A stretch of 63,297 nucleotides of DNA, the filler included, from Octopus bimaculoides (lineage: Eukaryota), in the NCBI RefSeq assembly GCF_001194135.2. It is 10 parts of 8 records of this genome, joined end to end, with 100 filler letters (N's around TTAATTAATTAA, not from the genome) between each part and the next. Parts side by side here need not be neighbours in the genome. Positions count along the whole stretch, not along the records: positions 41,710 to 51,541 come from NC_068981.1; 9 more parts are not named here. One strand, written 5' to 3'. Below the pieces are notes generated by a model, which searched no databases, had not been told where the DNA came from, and saw nothing but the letters and a program-made list of their open reading frames with translations. The stretch's first letter is position 1, and the number at the start of each line of letters is the position of its first letter. The position numbers were made by a program, and so were the translations under genes. Positions 41,710 to 51,641 of this stretch are shown in pieces.

Positions 41710-41760
<51 letters not shown>

Positions 41761-41762
<2 letters not shown>

Positions 41763-41925
41763 CGACGGGCTTCTTTCAGTTTCTGTCTAGAAAATTCACT
41801 CACAAGGCTTTCGTCGGCCCGAGGCTAGAGTAGAAGACACTTGTCGAAGGTCCCACGCAATGGGACTGAACCCGGAACTATGTGGTTGGGAAGCAAGCTT
41901 CTTACCATACAGCCACTCCTGTGCC
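41761..41925 (-). mobile_element. SINE family A head
   Basis: acgacgggcttctttcagttt...cttaccatacagccactcctgtgcct. Confidence 0.9.
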
Positions 41926-41929
41926 TACG

Positions 41930-43946
41930 ATTTACAAATATCTTCAAAATTTCTCCTGTAATTTCAAACTTGCTGAAGCACAACATGTCAGTGTGGAATA
42001 CCAATCTCCAGCTATATCAATCTAATGGAGTACTGACTTCAAATAATATTAATTTCAACTGTGGTATTTTCCAAGGTGACTCACTTTCACCTTTAGTTTT
42101 TGCATAGCCCTAATACCCTTTACAAGTGAACTTTACAGAACAGGGTATGGATATAAAATTGGCAACAAGAAAATAATTCATCTATTCTATATGGATGACT
42201 TAAAACTCTATATCAAAGACAATAATGATCTTGAAGGACTACTACGTACTGTGAAAGCATACAGTGATGACATCAGGATGGAATTTGGTCTCGACAAATG
42301 TACAAAGGCCACTTTTCAGAAAGGGAAATTGAAGACCTCACATTCAGTAGTATTTGATGTTGACACAGTTATAAAAGAACTCGAGCAGAAACAAACTTAC
42401 AAATACCTTGGAATAAATGAGGGCTCTGGCATTCAGCATGCAAGCATCAAAGAGAAGATCAGAAAAGAATGTTACAGGAGAGTTCGAGCAGTCCTGAAAT
42501 CCGAGTTAAATACACGTAACAAGGTGTTAGCCATAAATTCCTTCGCAGTTCCAGTTGTTATTTACAGTTTCAATGTGTTGAACTGGAATATCAGCGAAAT
42601 AAAGCAAATTGACAGGAAAATCCGTAAGCTGCTGACTTACAATAAGATGCATCACCCAAAGGCAGACGCATATCGGCTTTACCTTCCCAGAACCCAAGGA
42701 AATCGAGCTTGATCCAATTTGAAATCTGTTAGAAAACCACCACAATTGGATTGGCCAAATATCTTGAAACATCTAACGACTGAATGCTAAAGCTCGTTGA
42801 AAACCACAAGCGACATAAGAAGCTTCATTTTGTCTTGAAGGAGAGCAAAAAATCTGCCTGTGAGTTGATGCATAACACCTAAGTTGAGCAGAATGGTGGA
42901 AGTGAAGCAACTGTTGTTGCAAAAAAGGTGAAATCAATGGTAAAGGAAAAAGCGTTTGAATACCTGGTTGATAGTTGGGAGCATAAACCTCTGCATGGCA
43001 AATATGTGGCCCGTAACAAACAAGCTTATGTATACCAGAAGTACACTCTTCAGTGGCTACAGAACTCAGGGCTAAAGGCAGAGAGCGAAGGCTTTATTTT
43101 AGCTGCTCAAGATCAGAGCTTATTGACCCGTAATTACTAAGCCAATGTGAGGGAAAATGGAGTAGACCCAAAGTGCCGAAACTGCACTGAGATTGAAACA
43201 GTAGACCACCTAATTTCTGGATGTAAAGTATTAGAGTATAAATCAAGACGTGATAGTCGGCCAATATCTACACTGGCTAATATGTCGGCATTATAAAATC
43301 AAAACTGCTGACAAATGGTACAAGCACCACCCTGAGGCTGTAACTATTCTTTGAGACTTTCCCGTATGTACAGACCGGACCATCAAAGCTAATGTACCAG
43401 ATATTGTTGTGAAAGACAAAAGCAATAAAGTCTGTTTATTGATTGACACGAGCATACTCTGTGACCATAATATCTCGGCAAAAGAATTTGATAAGCTCAG
43501 AAAATATAAAGATTTGCTAATCTAAATCGAAAAGATGTGGCATCTCAAGACGGTTACAATACCAGTGGAATGTAGGAATACTTGTAATGATCAAAACAAG
43601 GAACTGAAAATTATTTAAGAATGATACCTGGCTTACCATCCGTGTAAGAGTTACAAAAGATTGTTTTAACTGGTTCGTCACACGTATTGAAAAGAGCATT
43701 GTTGTTGTAAATTTTCTTTCCTTTTTTCCCCTTTATTTTTTTGTTTTCTTTTTCTTACATTTTTTCCTATTTAAAAATATTTTCTTCTTTCCTTTATCTT
43801 TTTGTCCCTTTTTTCAGTCACATGACTTTGTAATTGAACAATCTGGTGTCTTTATTTTAATGTCCTGCCAGTGTATACAGTAAATTTCTTCGCCCTAGGT
43901 GTCGAGAAGACACTCTGCAAGGAATGGAAACAAAATTGAAAAAGAG

Positions 43947-44005
<59 letters not shown>

Positions 44006-44010
44006 TAATA
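41930..44010 (+). mobile_element. R4/Dong-like RLE non-LTR retrotransposon, 5'-truncated and disrupted, with (AAT)n tail
   Basis: GIFQGDSLSPL, FYMDDLKLY, MEFGLDKC, YKYLG, HHPKADAYRLYLPR, KPLHGKY, ESEGFILAAQDQSLLTRNY, CRNC..ETVDHLISGC and ANVPDIVVKDK...KEFDKLRKYKDL, with stops and frameshifts; (AAT)n at ~43950-44010. Confidence 0.93.
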
Positions 44011-44131
44011 AAGCAAGTGAAAACACATACGTAGTACACACACACATACATACATACATATATATATATATGTTTACATATATATTTGTATTTATATACA
44101 TACACACGTACATGTGTGTGCGCGCGCGCGT

Positions 44132-44570
44132 ACAGCAGGGACACTTCGGAAAATTCCTGGAATGGTGTCTAACCATTCTTAATAATTCAGAACTTTCGTT
44201 TTTAGAAGGTACGTCGTTTAACGACTACAATGACAATCTATCAAACACCGGAGGAGTAAAGAAATGGTGAGTGGGTTATATAAACGTGTCTTTGAAACAG
44301 TTTGGCATCAACCTGTGTTTGTCAAAGAGACCTTGCGAATATGTTATTATTTTTTTACTGCAAAATGATTCAAGAAATGAGAGGAGTACAGTTATACGAT
44401 GCCAAGCCATGAATTAAACAATATTACTGTTCCGTTATAGACAAATTTGGCAAGAGATAGACACAATAGACTTTTCCCCTTTCATGTCAACTTTAAACAA
44501 ACTAGTTAATTATTTCTATTGATTACAAATTTACTATTTCTCAAGGGTAATGGCGAAGTGTAACCATCAC
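44132..44570 (+). mobile_element. Possible mariner 5' end remnant
   Basis: TA followed by a TIR-like cagcagggacacttcggaaaattcctggaatg, and a later ITNLLFLKG resembling the mariner N-terminal VIKFLxLKG motif. Confidence 0.35.
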
Positions 44571-45065
44571 TTTGAGGGCTAAAATAGATCAATAGTCTCT
44601 AGTAAAGAACTATCTTGTAGAGACAGAGACATAATCACACACAAACATTATATATATACACGCACACATAATAACATAAATATATATATATATATATATA
44701 NNNNNNNNNNNNNNNNNNNNNNNNNNNNNNNNNNNNNNNNNNNNNNNNNNNNNNNNNNNNNNNNNNNNNNNNNNNNNNNNNNNNNNNNNNNNNNNNNNNN
44801 NNNNNNNNNNNNNNNNNNNNNNNNNNNNNNNNNNNNNNNNNNNNNNNNNNNNNNNNNNNNNNNNNNNNNNNNNNNNNNNNNNNNNNNNNNNNNNNNNNNN
44901 NNNNNNNNNNNNNNNNNNNNNNNNNNNNNNNNNNNNNNNNNNNNNNNNNNNNNNNNNNNNNNNNNNNNNNNNNNNNNNNNNNNNNNNNNNNNNNNNNNNN
45001 NNNNNNNNNNNNNNNNNNNNNNNNNNNNNNNNNNNNNNNNNNNNATATATATATTTATATGCGCG

Positions 45066-45443
45066 GGAGTGGCTGTGTGGTAAGTAGCTTGCTTCCGAAC
45101 CACATGGTTCTGGGTTCAGTCCCACTGTGTGGTACCTTGGATAAGTGTCTTCTACTAGAGCCTCGGGCCGACCAAAGCTTCGTGAGTGGATTTGGTAGAC
45201 GGAAACTGAAAGAAATTCGTTGTATATGTATGTATGTATGTGTGTGTGTATGTTTGTATGTCTGTGTTTGTCCCCCCCACATAGCTTGACAACTAGTGTG
45301 TTTACATCCCTGTAACTTAGAGGTTCGGCAAAATAGACCGATAGAATAAGTACCAGGCTTACAAAGAATAAATCCTGGGGTCGATTTGCTCGACTAAAGG
45401 TGCTCCAGCATGGCCACAGTCAAATGACTGAAGCAAGTAAAAG
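45066..45443 (+). mobile_element. SINE family A, near full length
   Basis: ggagtggctgtgtggtaag (A-box-like)...gggttcagtccc (B-box-like)...(TATG/TG)n...ccagcatggccacagtcaaatgactgaa. Confidence 0.92.
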
Positions 45444-45449
45444 TGTAAT

Positions 45450-45692
45450 CATAAACTTCAATTAGCGCTTTCATACGTTCGTAGTAATCATCAGATTTGA
45501 AAATGTATTTAACTGACAGTTGAGTTCTTGACAACTGTAGTACCTCTTAGAATGCTCCAACAAGTTGAATTTTTGGAATACGGTTTGACCAAATCAAATA
45601 CAGCTTAAACGTCACGGTTTAACTGTCAGTTAAATACATTTTGAAATCTGATGATTACTACGAACGTATGAAAGCGCTAATTGAATTTTATG
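45450..45692. mobile_element. Foldback element, 72-bp arms, 99-nt spacer
   Basis: 45450-45521 matches the reverse complement of 45621-45692 at 70/72. Confidence 0.9.
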
Positions 45693-46171
45693 AACATCAA
45701 AATATTTTTTTAATGTTAAGATACCATAATAAAAAACGTGAAAACCAGACAATGTTTTAACTTTATTCAACTGATATATATATATATCAATATTTCAATA
45801 TTGATATATTAATATTTTATATTCAATATTTCATTTATTCAATAAGACATTCACTACTTCATTTCATTTTACTATATATACTAATACTATATATTCCATA
45901 TTCTATATCCCAGGTTAATTTTATAAGAATATAGATAAAAGATAGAAAACAGACAGAGTTGGAATTCTTTTGAATAATATATATATAAGAGGTGAAGACC
46001 GATATTCTTCAAAGGGATGTCAAACATCCAAGTAAAGAATATATATAAAATACATATTCAGTATTTGCAAAAACAGGAAAGGAAGTATAAGGAAAGGAAA
46101 AAAATTGTAAGTGTAGACGAACTTTAATTCAATTTAAATCCAAGTTGGTACAGAACCGATATACATTCTAC

Positions 46172-46261
46172 ATTCTACAAATTATTTCGGAGTCTAATTC
46201 ATTCCAAAGACAAAGACGAAAAGCTTTTCATGAAATACAAATTAGATTCCTCATCAGGAAT
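46172..46261 (-). ncRNA. Type I hammerhead ribozyme motif (core intact)
   Basis: Minus strand: AUUC CUGAUGA GGAAUCUAAUU [40 nt] AAUUAGACUCC GAAA UAAUUUG UA GAAU. Stem I is AUUC/GAAU, stem II pairs 10 of 11, and the predicted GUA cleavage lies between 46176 and 46175. Folded by hand. Confidence 0.65.
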
Positions 46262-46330
46262 TACATACGTCTAGGCTACGAAAGGTCTTTGTATATTTTT
46301 GTTGGTCGCAATTATTCATACTAGTATGTA

Positions 46331-46420
46331 ATTCCTGATGAGGAATTTAATTTGTATTTCATGAAGAGTTTTTCGTCTCTATCTTTGGAATTAATTAGAC
46401 TCCGAAGCAATTTGTAGAAT
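46331..46420 (+). ncRNA. Type I hammerhead ribozyme motif (GAAA mutated to GAAG, likely impaired)
   Basis: AUUC CUGAUGA GGAAUUUAAUU [40 nt] AAUUAGACUCC GAAG CAAUUUG UA GAAU. Confidence 0.55.
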
Positions 46421-46493
46421 GTGTATTGGTTCTGTACCAACTTGAATTTGAATTGAATTAAAGTTCGTCTACACTTACAATTTTTTCCTCTCC

Positions 46494-46566
<73 letters not shown>

Positions 46567-46771
46567 NNNNNNNNNNNNNNNNNNNNNNNNNNNNNNNNNN
46601 NNNNNNNNNNNNNNNNNNNNNNNNNNNNNNNNNNNNNNNNNNNNNNNNNNNNNNNNNNNNNNNNNNNNNNNNNNNNNNNNNNNNNNNNNNNNNNNNNNNN
46701 NNNNNNNNNNNNNNNNNNNNNNNNNNNNNNNNNNNNNNNNNNNNNNNNNNNNNNNNNNNNNNNNNNNNNNN

Positions 46772-46926
46772 CAAGAACTCATCGATGAAAATCCACTATC
46801 ACATATAGAAAAATTAATAATTAAAAGCACAATAAATGAGTATAATATAAAGTAAAGTAAATATCATAAGATAAATATAATATAATATAATATATGTGAT
46901 AGTGGATTTTCATCGATGAGTTCTTG
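46772..46926. repeat. Perfect 36-bp inverted repeat with an AT-rich spacer
   Basis: caagaactcatcgatgaaaatccactatcacatata (46772-46807) is the exact reverse complement of 46891-46926. The left arm abuts a gap. Confidence 0.8.
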
Positions 46927-47680
46927 AAAATTGGTTATTTTCCCTAAAACTATATATATACATATACATATATATAATCTACCCATCCATCCACCTTTCC
47001 GTCTGTTATTAAATTAATCACCCACTCTGTCAACCCATCCATCCGTCCGTTCGTCCGTTCGTCCGTTTGTTTGTCTGTCTAGCTAGGTTGATATAGAGAT
47101 ATCCATAGATACGTATGTATATATGTGTCTAGATGTATGTGTATATATATATATTGTACATATATATGAGCGAGAACATATATATGTATGTAGATGTACA
47201 TATGCATACATATGTTTATATAGTTAGTTACATATGTGTGAATATATGTACACAGAAGATGTTTGTATCATATGTGTATATGATATCTCTATCATATGTG
47301 AATCCGTATATATATTTAAAGAGAGAGAGAGAGAGAGTGGGGAAAGAGTGATACACAGACAGAAAGATAGAGAATTTCGTTATACAAACTAAACATTCAT
47401 AATTCAACAGCTGAGACACATTAAAATAAATTCACGAATGTACTTTAAATAAACAAACATGTATTTACATATCGTGTTGATTCTCCTGTTTTCAGTAACC
47501 CATACCAACATAGGTCAGACTAAATGTTGATCTACCTTGTAATATATTTCTTATTGATTCGCAAATACGCAAATACACACACGTGTATACATATCTATCT
47601 ATCTGTCTGTCAGTCTACGTTATGTATGCGAGGAAAAAATAATACCAAAATTTTTCTAGATTCCTGTTTTGTTATGTATG

Positions 47681-47726
<46 letters not shown>

Positions 47727-48029
47727 NNNNNNNNNNNNNNNNNNNNNNNNNNNNNNNNNNNNNNNNNNNNNNNNNNNNNNNNNNNNNNNNNNNNNNNNNN
47801 NNNNNNNNNNNNNNNNNNNNNNNNNNNNNNNNNNNNNNNNNNNNNNNNTATATATATATATATATATATATATGATGTTTGTTTAAATTTGTTTGTGAAT
47901 GTGCGTGTATGTATCAAGATCATATTTCAGCAGTGCAGACATTTGTATAATAAGGTACCAGGATAACAATCGATATAAGAAGGAATACTGTATACGTATT
48001 CAACAAGAAACAACCAGTTTGAAACGACC

Positions 48030-48225
48030 AGAAACGAAAACATCATTTGATATTGTTTCCCATTAACATCGATACTGAAATATTATTAACAAGGGACAAT
48101 CTCTCATTAACAAACAATTTTCAAAACCCAAACTTCCATCGATTCCTTAACAGAAATAATATGCAGTTAAGCTTTAGCTGCATACGAAACTATTCCAGTA
48201 TAATATACGCACGTAATGTTGTGAG
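48030..48225 (+). mobile_element. Penelope-like element ORF fragment (RT to GIY-YIG linker region)
   Basis: RKRKHHLILFP...NFHRFLNRNNMQLSFSCIRNYSSIIYARN resembles the PLE consensus RKR..IWFNPP...LHKIFNRN..K.SYSC.PN...II..HN as I recall it. Confidence 0.6.
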
Positions 48226-49467
48226 AAAGTAAGTAACGGAGTCTCTACATGGATGCACGCTCTAAAAGAAACAGCAGGCAAATCTTCCTCAAATTACACT
48301 TTCTTTAAATTTTTAAATAGGATACATTACTTAACGTAGTTTTAGATATCCCTAAAAAGACGGGTTGCGTCGGACTATTTCCCCTTTGATCATAGTTTTG
48401 CTCAGTCTAAGTGTGTCTGAGGCAAAACATCTTCACTAACATCAGCAACACCAGTACCACTACTACCACTACCATGGTCCTAACAGTACTTGTGTTTGAT
48501 AGTCTTAAGGACACCTATCAACCTTCAGAAGTTCTGCATCTTCTATCTACATTATTTTGCAAGATAATCGTCGTTTAATGTTTCTCAACGTTTGTTATCT
48601 TGCAATCCTATTATTTTTCTATCAGTCACAGATAAATATGAAGATATAAGAATATACAAGGCAGTAGCATGTCATGTTTACATGCACTCTATAGTGTTGA
48701 TAAAGAATATTCGTTAATCAATTTAATTAATATCTTTCCTAATTGAATTTAATATATTACACTCATGGAATTATATACCAAACAAGGGGATCAAAATAGT
48801 TGTTTAAAATTCCATGAGCGCCATCTCTAATTTCATATATTAGATAACACAGTTCTGATTATGTCTTCTTTGGCGTTATAGAGTTATATGTAAAAATTTG
48901 GATTGTGAAGAACAGCTATATATTTCATAATAATCATCTGTGTAGCATAATTTAACGTATACATCTCATTGGAAGGCATGATGCTGTGGTTTTTGCCCGA
49001 AAAAAATTCTTCATAGACGCTCTGTGTTAGGAAGACTATATTTCGGAGCGATACGAACATCGTTGTAGCAGTGACTCACGAATGCGACAGTTCTGTTTCC
49101 TTCTGGAACATTGTCACTGACGTAAAGCCGGTCGTCACAAAATGTTCCCTATCCGATACACCTCGAGCAGTGAATAAAACATTCACTGGTATTGCGGAAA
49201 GCATGCCGAGCTACAATAAACTCAGTGCACCCAACAGAAATAACATTTAATCAAAATAGCCATAAGTACCATACACGACATTCTAACAACATATCTATGA
49301 AGAAATTTTCTTCAGACAAAAACTACATCATGGCTTTCAATGCTCCGAGATACGTATTGTGTCTCTCTATCGCAGCGTATCTATGAAAGGATTTTCTCTC
49401 GGATAAAGACCACAGTATCATACCTTCCTATAGTATATATACGTTAAATGCGGGGCACAGACTTTAA

Positions 49468-49694
49468 TTCAGTCCTTTAGCATTTGAACTGACCATATCT
49501 AGTCCATACATTCTACCTGTTTTAATGTTCAAATCGGCCAGATCCAACCTCTCACACCTATCCTAAGTTTGTCGTTCTAAAACTAAACAATTACATCATT
49601 GAAATCTCAAAACTACGAGATGATGTATAATTCAAAACAATGTGAATAAATAAGGTTTACATTTGACAGAATAATTTAAATGCTAAAGGGTTAA
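49468..49694. mobile_element. piggyBac-like MITE
   Basis: Right end AATGCTAAAGGG followed by TTAA (49691-49694); degenerate left end gtcctttagcattt. Homolog of 36663-36838. Confidence 0.7.
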
Positions 49695-49969
49695 GGTTAT
49701 TGCAATGGGTCTGAGACATTTTAAGCACAACCGTTTAAGCGTTCTCTATTTAAGATCAGACGTTTTAATGTTTCTCTCGCTTTCAATCTCCCTCTCTCTC
49801 AGTTTCTATCTCCCTCTATCCTCTTGCCACCCCTCTCTCTCTCTCTCAGTTTGTGTGTGAGAGCTTATTTCTCGATCTGTATGAGGGGAGGGAAAGTGTT
49901 TATGTCAATTAGCAAACTAGCTCGTTAAGAAAATCTCTATTATGTCAGTCTTGTTTAATAAATTACTAT

Positions 49970-50027
49970 GTCTCTCTTTCTCCTTCTCTCTCTCTCCCTC
50001 GCTCTCTCTCCCTCGCTCTCGCTCTCT

Positions 50028-50058
<31 letters not shown>

Positions 50059-50291
50059 GCTCTCTTTCTCTCCCTCGCTCTCTCTCTCCCTCTCGCTCTC
50101 TCTCTCCCTCTCGCTCTCTCTCTCCCTCGCGCTCTCTCCCCCTCGCTCTCTCTCTCTCTCGCTCTCTCTCTCCCTCGCTGTCTCTCCCCCCTCGCTCTCT
50201 CTCTCTCTCGCTCTCTCTCTCCCTCGCTCTCTCTCTCGTTCTCACTCTTCCTGTCTGCATGTCTGTATCTCCGAATGCTCGTGTGTGTGTA

Positions 50292-50322
<31 letters not shown>

Positions 50323-50340
50323 ACACACACACGCGCGCAC
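49970..50340. repeat. Compound (CT)n/(CTCG)/(TG)/(CG)/(CA) microsatellite
   Basis: Seen directly; source of the ERERAR and SLSLA pseudo-ORFs. Confidence 0.95.
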
Positions 50341-50656
50341 ACGTGCGTTTACCTTCAGCGCCGAGAAGTTCTGTTGCCAAAACAAAACTGAATGTTCAGG
50401 CAGCCGTGACAAATCGTCAGTATCCAAACAGATGCGCCCAAACATCTTGTGTATTTCATGCCTGAAGGTGTCATACGAAAATTGAACAAGATATTCATCG
50501 TTGTTGGTTAATTAGACATTAATTAACACAACAGCAGCAGCATGAACGATGAATGTACAAAATTCGTATAATACTGAACATTTAAGAAAATATGAACATT
50601 GATAAGGGAAGGTTTCGGATGTCTCGCTTCACTCGTAATATTATTGTCATTTATTA

Positions 50657-50860
50657 GGGCAGTGAGCTGGCAGAATCATTTGCACGTCGGGCAAAATGCT
50701 TAACGGCATTTCGTCCGTCCCTACGTTCTGAGTTCAAATTCCGGCGTAGTCGGATATCAGTTCGATATCAATAAAATAAGAACCAGTTAGGTACTGGTTC
50801 AGTGTAACCGACTTACCCCTTCCCTGAACTTGCTGGATTTGTACCAAAACTTGAAATCAA
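50657..50860 (+). mobile_element. SINE family B
   Basis: ggcagtgagctggcagaatc...ctgagttcaaattcc. Confidence 0.85.
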
Positions 50861-50958
50861 TATTACTATTTCCAAAGGTTAGTTAACTAATTCTCAAACA
50901 GCATTTAAGTTTCGCATTTTGCTTGGTATTTAAGCAGAATAAACTTTAATATTAAAAC

Positions 50959-50995
<37 letters not shown>

Positions 50996-51108
50996 CATTG
51001 TCTATTGACTTTACTACGCATGTTAGCAATCGGTATAAAATTTTTTCTAAATTTTCTACCCTTATTATTTTCACAGTATGTATATGTATGTATGTATGTA
51101 TATATATG

Positions 51109-51155
<47 letters not shown>

Positions 51156-51387
51156 GTATGTATGTATATATGTATGCATATGTATGTATATATATATGTA
51201 TGTATATGTATGTGTGTCTGTGTGTGTATGTGTGTGTGTATAGTGTGTGTGTGTGTGTGTATGTATATGTGTGCATGTATGTACGTATGTGCATGTATAT
51301 ATATACATTTCAAAATGTAACTACATGTGGATTGTTGGCGATTTTTTTCCTTCGTCTTCCTTTTCCTTTGGACTTTCTTCTGTCTTC

Positions 51388-51424
51388 TGTTTCTGAAGAA
51401 GAGCTTTGCCCGAAACGTAAAACA
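51388..51424 (+). ncRNA. Minimal hammerhead ribozyme motif within a Penelope-like pseudo-LTR (~51320-51530)
   Basis: UGUUU CUGAAGA A GAGC UUU GCCC GAAA C GUA AAACA. Stem I has 5 bp, stem II has one mismatch, and a palindromic ACGU replaces helix III. Confidence 0.65.
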
Positions 51425-51641
51425 ACCTTTCTTTCCTTCCCTGAGCGTCTTTTAATATTTTGCATGTACCACATCCTCGCGTTGTTGTTTTATTCTTGTG
51501 TTTTTTCTTCGTTGTTTTTGGGATTATATATATATATATATNNNNNNNNNNNNNNNNNNNNNNNNNNNNNNNNNNNNNNNNNNNNTTAATTAATTAANNN
51601 NNNNNNNNNNNNNNNNNNNNNNNNNNNNNNNNNNNNNNNNN

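What the first reader, a model, noticed from the sequence alone, without database searches (positions are those of the whole stretch)
46086..46498. Rod-like ~410-nt foldback with a hammerhead ribozyme in each polarity
Seen: the left arm on the minus strand reads AUUC-CUGAUGA-GGAAUCUAAUU-(40 nt containing the palindrome GAAAAGCUUUUC)-AAUUAGACUCC-GAAA-UAAUUUG-UA-GAAU, a complete type I hammerhead. The right arm on the plus strand has the same fold with GAAG and a C-G pair in stem III, so the consensus of the two arms is a canonical ribozyme. Known: Penelope-like pseudo-LTRs and metazoan non-LTR retrozymes carry type I hammerheads, PLE pseudo-LTRs can be inverted, and viroid-like RNAs are rods with ribozymes in both polarities base-paired to each other. 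Inference: most simply an inverted PLE pseudo-LTR pair. However, the long stem II differs from the minimal motifs at 51388 and 55122, and the geometry would make self-cleavage depend on co-transcriptional folding before the rod forms. It may be an undescribed small ribozyme-bearing mobile family or an endogenised viroid-like RNA. This is the best candidate for a novel system in the window.
Basis: partly seen in the sequence, partly recalled or inferred. Interest (0 to 1): 0.85.

Follow-up and report, generated by a model that had tools for sequence, protein, structure and literature searches.

The report
Inverted pair of hammerhead-bearing retroelement fragments
A 413-base DNA hairpin in an invertebrate-like, repeat-rich region is most likely two dead, head-to-head copies of a short retroelement end that carries a hammerhead ribozyme motif, a known kind of genomic fossil and not a viroid-like RNA or a new system.

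Summary
Bases 46086-46498 form a 413-nt foldback: arms 46086-46268 and 46324-46498, 92.5% identical, 55-nt spacer, RNA fold -248 kcal/mol, z = -31. The left arm, read on the minus strand, has every conserved hammerhead core base in type I topology. A match of this quality did not occur in 20 Mb of composition-matched random sequence.

"A ribozyme in each polarity" is only the inverted repeat showing one motif twice. The right copy has G at the conserved position 15.1. The left copy has a 7-nt duplication beside helix I. No Rfam hammerhead model scores either copy. The hammerhead fold is not the minimum-energy fold of an arm, and the 180-bp inter-arm duplex would outcompete it.

The sense strand of both copies runs from the centre outward, so two 5'-truncated copies meet head to head. 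The right end abuts a (TA)n(CA)n microsatellite. This matches published Penelope-like element (PLE) insertion architecture and published opposite-strand hammerhead pairs.

No other copy of the family could be retrieved, so PLE membership and covariation remain untested. Verdict: probably a new member of a known kind. Interest is low to moderate.

The parts
46086..46498 (.). Whole foldback (413 nt): two inverted copies plus a central spacer. The outermost TATA on each side may belong to the target or microsatellite and not to the element.
   Evidence: (I13, I15)
46086..46268 (-). Left arm. This copy has its sense strand on the minus strand, its 5' end at the centre and its 3' end at 46086-46092. 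It carries a 7-nt tandem duplication (GTAGAAT) that the right arm lacks.
46269..46323 (.). Non-palindromic 55-nt spacer. It could be extra 5' sequence of one copy (unequal truncation) or junction filler.
46324..46498 (+). Right arm. This copy has its sense strand on the plus strand, its 5' end at the centre and its 3' end abutting the microsatellite.
46172..46261 (-). Type I hammerhead motif, left copy. Helix I 46261-46258 with 46175-46172 (4 bp). CUGAUGA 46257-46251. Helix II 46250-46189 (62-nt hairpin: 3 bp, A.C mismatch, 7 bp, then a long imperfect stem). GAA 46188-46186. Helix III 46185-46177 (3 bp, 3-nt loop). H17 = A at 46176, predicted cut between 46176 and 46175. All core bases are canonical.
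46331..46420 (+). Same motif, right copy. Core 46335-46341, helix II 46342-46403, GAA 46404-46406, G instead of A at 15.1 (46407), H17 = A at 46416. Helix I can extend to 4 bp + 1-nt bulge + 5 bp.
46497..46566 (.). (TA)n(CA)n microsatellite directly abutting the right 3' end. It runs into an assembly gap (N 46567-46771).

Best explanation
The foldback is a fossil insertion made of two 5'-truncated copies of the 3'-terminal, hammerhead-bearing part of a short retroelement, joined head to head. The element is either the pseudo-LTR/3' end of a Penelope-like element (PLE) or a PLE-dependent non-autonomous retrozyme-like element.

In active relatives (established knowledge), longer-than-unit transcripts of tandem copies are cut by a type I hammerhead. 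Its weak, near-palindromic helix III makes it work as a dimer with a neighbouring copy. The processed RNA is copied into DNA by the PLE RT/GIY-YIG enzyme at nicked targets, often microsatellites. This gives ragged 5' ends and frequently an inverted truncated copy at the 5' side.

Here (inference) that process left two ~180-235-nt copies with common 3' ends facing outward. The 'ribozyme in each polarity' and the rod shape are by-products of this DNA-level inverted duplication. Neither copy is likely to cleave at this locus, for four reasons:
- The right one has G at 15.1.
- The left one has a 7-nt duplication next to helix I.
- Each transcript polarity has only one sense ribozyme and no dimer partner in tandem.
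- The ~180-bp inter-arm duplex (-248 kcal/mol) would outcompete the -11 kcal/mol hammerhead fold.

If transcribed, the locus would mainly yield a long dsRNA hairpin.
For: - **Motif quality.** The left copy has a complete core and three helices in type I order. No hit of this quality occurred in 20 Mb of matched random sequence. A much laxer descriptor gave only one weak hit in 176 kb of unrelated real loci.
- **Helix II.** It folds as the same single hairpin in both arms on its own (z = -2.5 and -1.9).
- **Differences between arms.** Within the 90-nt motif, 5 of the 6 base pairs that differ between the arms stay paired. One of these is a double change, A-U versus G-C. This is suggestive only (p about 0.02-0.17).
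- **Orientation.** The sense strand runs centre to outside in both arms, so the shared ends are 3' ends and the variable junction is 5'.
- **Target.** The right 3' end abuts (TA)n(CA)n.
- **Literature on PLE hammerheads.** They have helix I of 4-5 bp, a larger than usual helix II, G10.1-C11.1 and a tiny palindromic helix III. They occur mostly as solo truncated copies, and sometimes as pairs 100-700 bp apart on opposite strands.
- **Literature on PLE insertions.** They often carry an inverted 5'-truncated copy that forms an inverted repeat, prefer (TA)n/(CA)n targets and have 30-40-bp tails.
- **Literature on retrozymes.** Animal retrozymes are derived from PLE pseudo-LTRs.
- **Nearby motifs.** A second minimal hammerhead-like motif lies 5 kb away in a ~190-nt fragment flanked by microsatellites (51388-51424). 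A second small foldback (45449-45693) has the same centre-outward geometry.
- **Not an artefact.** The arms differ by 7.5% plus indels, so the palindrome was not created by the assembler.
Against: - No RT/GIY-YIG ORF lies in the 9.8-kb piece. The only RT fragment (41841-~43700) is LINE-like, with a CCHC knuckle and no GIY-YIG.
- No other copy of the family was found. Two protein searches with the arm ORF and five DNA pattern scans gave nothing related. Neither did the 14 loci fetched through the LINE RT hits. Ragged 5' ends, tandem copies and PLE adjacency are therefore unverified.
- Rfam hammerhead models do not score the motif.
- Helix II (62 nt) is far longer than the 7-8 bp described for PLE minimal hammerheads. 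The unpaired base between A9 and 10.1 that is typical of those motifs is absent.
- The hammerhead fold is 4.5 kcal/mol above the arm's minimum-energy fold. In that fold an AAUUCC/GGAAU hairpin sequesters CUGAUGA.
- The flanking TA/TATA is equally compatible with a TA target duplication of a DNA transposon.
Confidence: 0.55

Rival explanations
1. A MITE-like or foldback DNA transposon. It would be a non-autonomous cut-and-paste element made almost entirely of long terminal inverted repeats, inserted at a TA site. Its arm sequence would have captured, or descended from, a hammerhead-bearing repeat.
For: The element is a ~410-nt near-perfect inverted repeat with a short central loop, and its outer ends coincide with the repeat ends. 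TA/TATA stands on both sides. A second small foldback lies 400 nt away (I14). No retroelement ORF of the PLE type is nearby.
Against: - The TA flank is uninformative because the right flank is a (TA)n microsatellite.
- There is no recognisable transposase-type terminal motif.
- A hammerhead motif of this quality would be an unexplained passenger.
- I found no paper describing hammerheads in MITEs.
- The centre-outward sense orientation and the microsatellite target are predicted by the retroelement model and not by this one.
Confidence: 0.2
2. A generic inverted duplication or hairpin repeat in which the hammerhead-like motif is a coincidence and never was a ribozyme.
For: - Rfam's five hammerhead families report nothing, even at E <= 10.
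- Helix I is only 4 contiguous bp and there is no recognisable loop-loop tertiary contact.
- The hammerhead is not the minimum-energy fold, and the 90-nt motif has an unremarkable z-score (-0.8 and -1.4).
- With two copies, covariation cannot be assessed (248 of 500 shuffles reach the observed values).
- The descriptor was fitted after seeing the motif.
Against: - There were 0 hits of comparable quality in 20 Mb of matched random sequence, with an analytic expectation of about 2e-4 per Mb per strand (and my own arithmetic).
- All 11 core bases are canonical in the left copy.
- Helix III is near-palindromic, as in animal type I hammerheads.
- Other hammerhead-like fragments lie nearby in PLE-typical settings.
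Confidence: 0.12
3. An endogenised viroid-like or retrozyme-like circular RNA: a rod with a ribozyme in each polarity, copied into DNA.
For: The RNA would fold as a rod, and formally a hammerhead sequence is present on both strands. In some viroids the two hammerhead domains face each other in the rod (own knowledge).
Against: - The two 'ribozymes' are the same sequence seen twice because of the repeat, not two independent ribozymes.
- The arms are 92-95% Watson-Crick complementary, far more than natural viroid rods.
- There is one loop and one flush open end that coincides with the insertion boundaries. A linearised circle should show two loops or a permuted one.
- Each polarity has a single sense ribozyme, so unit-length excision and circularisation are impossible from this locus.
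- The hammerhead is type I, the animal retroelement type.
Confidence: 0.03
4. An assembly artefact: a false palindrome created at a contig end.
For: The foldback sits on a 1.5-kb contig between N gaps (45045-46566) in a microsatellite-rich, short-read-looking scaffold. PLE-type inverted structures are known to trouble short-read assembly.
Against: The arms differ by 13 substitutions and 10 gap columns, including a 7-nt duplication, and are separated by a unique 55-nt spacer. Artefactual palindromes are perfect.
Confidence: 0.02

Closest known systems
Minimal or short-helix-III type I hammerheads in pseudo-LTRs of Penelope-like elements (Cervera & de la Pena 2014, PMC4209133)
   Same: Type I topology, canonical core, G10.1-C11.1 and a short helix I (4 bp). 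Helix II is longer than in canonical animal hammerheads. Helix III is tiny and near-palindromic, implying dimeric action. The published motifs occur mostly as truncated solo copies and sometimes as pairs on opposite strands 100-700 bp apart. Here the two predicted cleavage sites are 240 nt apart.
   Different: Helix II here is a 62-nt hairpin and not 7-8 bp. There is no unpaired base between A9 and 10.1. Helix III has a 3-nt loop and is not loop-free. No PLE ORF lies nearby, and no family alignment is available.
PLE insertion architecture: an inverted 5'-truncated copy next to the 5' end, with a microsatellite target (Craig et al. 2021, 10.1101/2021.04.23.441226)
   Same: Head-to-head inverted copies with 3' ends outward, a junction with extra unique sequence, and a (TA)n(CA)n microsatellite at one end.
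   Different: In the described cases the inverted copy flanks a full or partial coding unit, whereas here both copies are only ~180-235 nt. The microsatellite bias was documented mainly for Naiad/Chlamys PLEs, which lack hammerheads.
Animal non-LTR retrozymes (Cervera & de la Pena 2020, PMC7229834; Li et al. 2026 bioRxiv 10.64898/2026.07.22.740005)
   Same: Short (170-400 nt), AT-rich, non-coding units that carry one type I hammerhead with a weak helix III. The rest of the unit is highly self-paired. They are derived from PLE pseudo-LTRs.
   Different: Retrozymes are direct tandem repeats that yield circular RNAs. Here the two units are inverted, so no unit can be excised. No direct repeat of the arm exists in the piece.
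Hammerhead viroids (Avsunviroidae) and other viroid-like circular RNAs
   Same: Rod-like fold, with a hammerhead sequence readable on both strands.
   Different: Viroid hammerheads are type III, differ between polarities and sit in imperfect rods with two closed ends. This is a DNA inverted repeat of one type I motif with one open end.

Membership tests
Hammerhead ribozyme, type I | Conserved core: C3 U4 G5 A6 N7 G8 A9, G12 A13 A14, A15.1-U16.1 pair, H17 not G | tested here: met
   The left copy (46261..46172, minus strand) has every position canonical, with H17 = A at 46176. The right copy fails at one position (G at 15.1, base 46407).
Hammerhead ribozyme, type I | Three helices around the core, with helix I open-ended | tested here: met
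   Helix I is 4 bp. Helix II has 10 of 11 pairs at its base plus a long extension. Helix III is 3 bp with a 3-nt loop. 31 of 31 pairs form in the left arm and 30 of 31 in the right.
Hammerhead ribozyme, type I | Recognition by curated covariance models (Rfam hammerhead families) | tested here: not met
   No hammerhead family appears among 65 matches at E <= 10 over the piece, nor in a 151-nt search around the left copy. The 62-nt helix II is a likely reason, but the test was not passed.
Hammerhead ribozyme, type I | Covariation of the helices among family members | tested here: inconclusive
   Only two copies exist. 5 of the 6 pairs that differ stay paired, and one is a double compensatory change. 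The shuffle control is uninformative (248/500), and my mutation simulation gives p of about 0.02-0.17.
Hammerhead ribozyme, type I | Self-cleavage 3' of H17 | not testable with these tools
   There are no RNA data. Thermodynamics are unfavourable: -11.2 kcal/mol for the hammerhead fold against -15.7 for the arm's minimum-energy fold, and -248 for the foldback.
PLE pseudo-LTR hammerhead | Lies in the terminal repeat of an RT + GIY-YIG element, or is shown homologous to one | tested here: not met
   No GIY-YIG or PLE-type RT is present in 41710-51541; the only RT fragment is LINE-like. Homology to a PLE end could not be tested because no relatives were retrievable. Most published PLE hammerheads are also solo, so this lowers the claim of membership without excluding it.
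PLE pseudo-LTR hammerhead | Unpaired nucleotide between A9 and 10.1 | tested here: not met
   G10.1 follows A9 directly in both arms. The nearby motif at 51393 does have the extra base.
PLE pseudo-LTR hammerhead | G10.1-C11.1 pair; short helix I (4-5 bp); enlarged helix II | tested here: met
   The G-C pair is at 10.1/11.1 and helix I is 4 bp. Helix II is enlarged, well beyond the published 7-8 bp.
PLE pseudo-LTR hammerhead | Palindromic 15.2-16.2 and loop 3 (dimer-forming helix III) | tested here: inconclusive
   Positions 15.2/16.2 are C-G in the right arm and U.G in the left. The loop region contains AAUU, and self-pairing of the 9-nt segment leaves one U.U (read from the sequence). The cofold of two copies is only -2.3 kcal/mol.
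PLE insertion architecture | Inverted 5'-truncated copy head to head; microsatellite target | tested here: met
   The sense strands diverge from the centre, and (TA)n(CA)n lies at the right 3' end. 5' raggedness across copies was not testable.
Animal non-LTR retrozyme | Direct tandem repeats, each with a sense hammerhead | tested here: not met
   The only second copy is inverted. No direct copy of the arm lies in the piece.
MITE / foldback DNA transposon | Terminal inverted repeats plus a fixed-length target-site duplication | tested here: inconclusive
   The inverted repeat reaches the ends. TA/TATA lies on both sides, but the right flank is a (TA)n run.
Viroid-like circular RNA (endogenised) | Closed rod with two terminal loops and independent ribozymes in the two polarities | tested here: not met
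   There is one 55-nt loop and one flush open end at the genomic junctions. The two motifs are the two copies of the repeat, 96% identical over 90 nt.

The most novel reading that the evidence does not exclude
The arms may not be a passive duplicate. They may be two diverged members of an undescribed family of small hammerhead-bearing elements with an unusually long, rod-like helix II, whose RNA structure is under selection. This is hinted at by structure-preserving differences between the arms, including one A-U/G-C swap. Such a family would spread as hairpin units, that is, a ribozyme-carrying foldback element distinct from tandem retrozymes and from PLE pseudo-LTRs.
Probability: 0.1. Interest if true: 0.6.

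Novelty: new member of a known kind. Interest (0 to 1): 0.3.

Why it matters
If the best reading is right, this is one more fossil of the very abundant hammerhead-bearing PLE/retrozyme world of invertebrate genomes. It is useful mainly for repeat annotation and as an example of a type I hammerhead with a very long helix II that curated models miss.

It also carries a caution for scanning. Any motif inside an inverted repeat will look as if it is present in both polarities in a rod, so that pattern alone should not be read as viroid-like.

The finding would matter more only if genome-wide copies showed a foldback-specific, structure-constrained family.

Tried and rejected
1. **Other copies through proteins.** The stop-free 58-codon frame across the right arm found nothing with the word-indexed search or with exhaustive phmmer against 1.84 billion representatives. 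A SINE-derived ORF also found nothing.
2. **Other copies through DNA patterns.** I ran two metagenome scans, one prokaryote-genome scan and two viral scans. The four loci returned are unrelated chance matches in coding-like sequence.
3. **Reaching the source genome through the LINE RT fragment.** The best relatives are 69% identical. The 14 loci fetched from ENA assemblies and TARA metagenomes share only the RT. They contain neither foldback, nor the SINE-like repeat, nor the 51393 motif.
4. **Rfam.** A search at a lax threshold on the whole piece and on small windows gave only sub-threshold miRNA-hairpin matches. One example is MIR7504 at 51.7 bits against a gathering score of 83. These reflect the hairpin shape and nothing more.
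5. **Literature search for the SINE-like sequence to name the organism.** It gave no hits. My impression that the repeats look cephalopod is memory only and is not used as evidence.
6. **Sequence kinship among the three hammerhead-like fragments in the piece.** There is none beyond low-complexity 11-13-mers.
7. **Covariation statistics.** They are meaningless with two sequences.
8. **Six-frame Pfam scan of the LINE region.** ORF inspection replaced it.

Full report
**1. What is there**

The piece (41710-51541) is AT-rich (65% A+T) and full of microsatellites. It has three assembly gaps (44701-45044, 46567-46771, 47727-47848). The finding sits on the 1.5-kb contig 45045-46566.

The repeat finder reports two adjoining inverted-repeat blocks, 46170-46268/46324-46422 (92%) and 46099-46172/46413-46486 (95%). 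A global alignment of the left arm (reverse complement) with the right arm runs from 46086/46498 inward. It has 160 matches, 12 transitions, 1 transversion and 10 gap columns, the largest being a 7-nt tandem duplication (GTAGAAT) present only in the left arm.

The 55 nt between the arms (46269-46323) are not palindromic. As RNA the 413 nt fold into a single rod of -247.9 kcal/mol, against a shuffle mean of -76.4 (z = -31). The other strand gives -240 kcal/mol.

**2. The hammerhead motif**

On the minus strand the left arm reads AUUC / CUGAUGA / 62-nt helix II / GAA / AUAAUUUGU / A / GAAU (46261..46172).
- Every conserved core base is canonical: C3-A9, G12-A14, A15.1-U16.1, and H17 = A at 46176.
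- Helix I is 4 bp.
- Helix II starts G-C, G-C, A-U, then an A.C mismatch, then 7 bp. It continues as a long imperfect hairpin.
- Folded alone, the 62 nt give the same single hairpin in both arms (-13.4 and -13.1 kcal/mol; z = -2.5 and -1.9).
- Helix III is A-U, U.G, A-U around a 3-nt loop, and the segment contains AAUU.

The right arm on the plus strand (46331..46420) is 96% identical over these 90 nt. It has G at 15.1 and C-G at 15.2/16.2.

Read directly from the sequence, helix I of the right copy can extend: 4 bp, a 1-nt bulge, then 5 more pairs, two of them G.U. In the left copy the 7-nt duplication sits exactly there. Each copy therefore carries a different defect relative to the other. 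I do not write out any merged sequence.

**3. Is it more than chance?**

I wrote an RNAmotif-style descriptor. In the piece only the left copy passes.

In 20 Mb of first-order Markov sequence with the piece's composition:
- The laxest version (helix I at least 4 bp, helix II at least 3 bp, helix III at least 2 bp) gave one hit. That is about 0.005 per 51.6-kb window on both strands.
- Versions at the observed quality gave none.
- My analytic estimate for the observed quality is about 2e-4 per Mb per strand, roughly one per several-gigabase genome.

A still laxer descriptor gave one weak hit in 176 kb of unrelated real loci.

Against this, Rfam's hammerhead models report nothing, even at E <= 10 in a 151-nt search. 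Only sub-threshold miRNA-hairpin models respond to the foldback shape. The hammerhead is also not the preferred fold of an isolated arm. It scores -11.2 kcal/mol against a -15.7 kcal/mol minimum-energy fold, in which AAUUCC pairs with GGAAU(C/U) and buries CUGAUGA.

I conclude that the sequence very probably descends from a real hammerhead. Nothing shows that these two copies are active.

**4. 'One ribozyme per polarity' is a by-product**

In an inverted repeat the minus strand of the left arm is the plus strand of the right arm. The two motifs are therefore one motif seen twice, not independent evidence and not two different ribozymes.

Each transcript polarity would contain a single sense hammerhead, so no unit can be excised or circularised from this locus. 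The rod has one loop and one flush open end, which coincides with the boundaries to flanking DNA. A DNA copy of a closed circular rod should not look like this.

The inter-arm duplex is about 20 times more stable than the hammerhead fold. The viroid-like reading is therefore not supported.

**5. What the anatomy says about origin**

In both arms the ribozyme sense strand runs from the centre outward. The shared, well-defined ends of the two copies are thus their 3' ends, and the two 5' ends meet at the irregular centre. The right 3' end abuts (TA)n(CA)n.

This is the published architecture of Penelope-like element (PLE) insertions:
- strong 5' truncation;
- frequently an inverted 5'-truncated copy at the 5' side, producing an inverted repeat;
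- a short extra 'tail';
- a bias for (TA)n/(CA)n targets.

PLE pseudo-LTRs carry type I hammerheads with helix I of 4-5 bp, an enlarged helix II, G10.1-C11.1 and a minimal palindromic helix III, and they are thought to act as dimers. Most copies in a genome are solo and truncated. Pairs 100-700 bp apart on opposite strands were noted in Schistosoma. Animal retrozymes are now regarded as non-autonomous derivatives of PLE pseudo-LTRs.

Two neighbours fit the same picture.
- 51388-51424 holds a minimal motif: helix I of 5 bp, the bulged base after A9, a 4-position helix II with one A.C, an ACGU helix III, and H17 = A. It lies inside a ~190-nt unique fragment bounded by microsatellites on both sides.
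- 45449-45693 is a second foldback. Its arms carry CUGAUGA...GAAA-GCGC-U-A, again pointing outward. That motif fails the descriptor because there is no 10.1-11.1 pair and helix I is only 3 bp.

**6. What argues against, and what could not be tested**

There is no PLE ORF in the piece. The only RT fragment (41841-~43700) is a decayed LINE-type gene with a CCHC knuckle and no GIY-YIG.

Helix II is much longer than in described PLE motifs, and the A9/10.1 bulge is missing.

The key test is how other copies of the family are arranged and whether their helices covary. It could not be run. The arm's open frame has no relative in either protein library. DNA pattern scans of metagenomes, prokaryotic genomes and viral contigs returned only chance matches. 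The invertebrate and TARA loci reached through the LINE RT share nothing else with the piece.

Between the two arms, 8 differences fall in the 90-nt motif and 7 of them are at paired positions. 5 of the 6 affected pairs remain paired, including one A-U/G-C double change in distal helix II. A mutation simulation puts this at p of about 0.02-0.17 depending on conditioning. That is a hint of RNA-level constraint, not a result.

The TA/TATA at both ends could be a TA target duplication of a DNA transposon, so a MITE-like element remains the main rival.

**7. Verdict**

- Observation: confirmed.
A MITE-like carrier stands at about 0.2, coincidence at about 0.12, and a viroid-like origin or an artefact at a few percent each.
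- Novelty: a new member of a known kind, notable only for its long helix II and for being invisible to Rfam.
- Interest: about 0.3.

Noticed in passing
window 45449-45693: A second, smaller foldback with 73-nt arms (97% complementary) and a 99-nt spacer, directly after a SINE-like repeat. Each arm carries CUGAUGA...GAAA-GCGC-U-A. In the right arm the core is 45648-45654 and H17 is 45679. The sense strand again runs centre to outside. The motif is not a canonical hammerhead: no 10.1-11.1 pair beside the core and helix I of only 3 bp. It may be a decayed relative.
   Followed up: partly
window 51388-51424 (+), inside 51335-51524: A minimal hammerhead-like motif of the PLE type. It has helix I of 5 bp, CUGAAGA, a bulged A, a 4-position helix II with one A.C mismatch and a UUU loop, GAA, the ACGU palindrome and H17 = A at 51419. 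It sits in a ~190-nt unique stretch bounded by microsatellites on both sides. Rfam does not report it.
   Followed up: partly
window 46086-46498: Substitutions between the two arms are 12 transitions to 1 transversion. This is a stronger bias than I would expect from neutral decay. It could reflect tolerance of G.U in a hairpin, RNA editing of a template before copying, or chance (roughly p = 0.04 against a 2:1 expectation, my arithmetic).
   Followed up: partly
window 46251-46266 (-) and 46326-46347 (+): AAUUCC upstream of, and overlapping, the CUGAUGA box is complementary to the GGAAU(C/U) that opens helix II. A small local hairpin therefore competes with the hammerhead fold, and it is part of the minimum-energy structure of the left arm.
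   Followed up: partly
window 41841-~43700 (+): A decayed LINE-type reverse transcriptase gene fragment. The reading frame is broken into at least five pieces by frame changes or stops. It has a weak RVT_1 match and a CCHC knuckle after the RT, with no GIY-YIG. The best database relatives are 69% identical, from large ENA eukaryote-like contigs and TARA metagenomes.
   Followed up: partly
window 45058-45445 and 41714-41927: A SINE-like repeat (head, internal GT microsatellite, 3' part) and an inverted partial copy 84% complementary to its head (I5). ARAGORN sees no tRNA in either. From memory it resembles an abundant cephalopod SINE, but no tool result confirms the organism.
   Followed up: partly
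L005 2501-4045 (-): An RT + HTH/GIY-YIG (PLE-like) gene pair in an unrelated ENA eukaryote-like contig, fetched by chance. My descriptor finds no hammerhead motif in that 20-kb locus.
   Followed up: no
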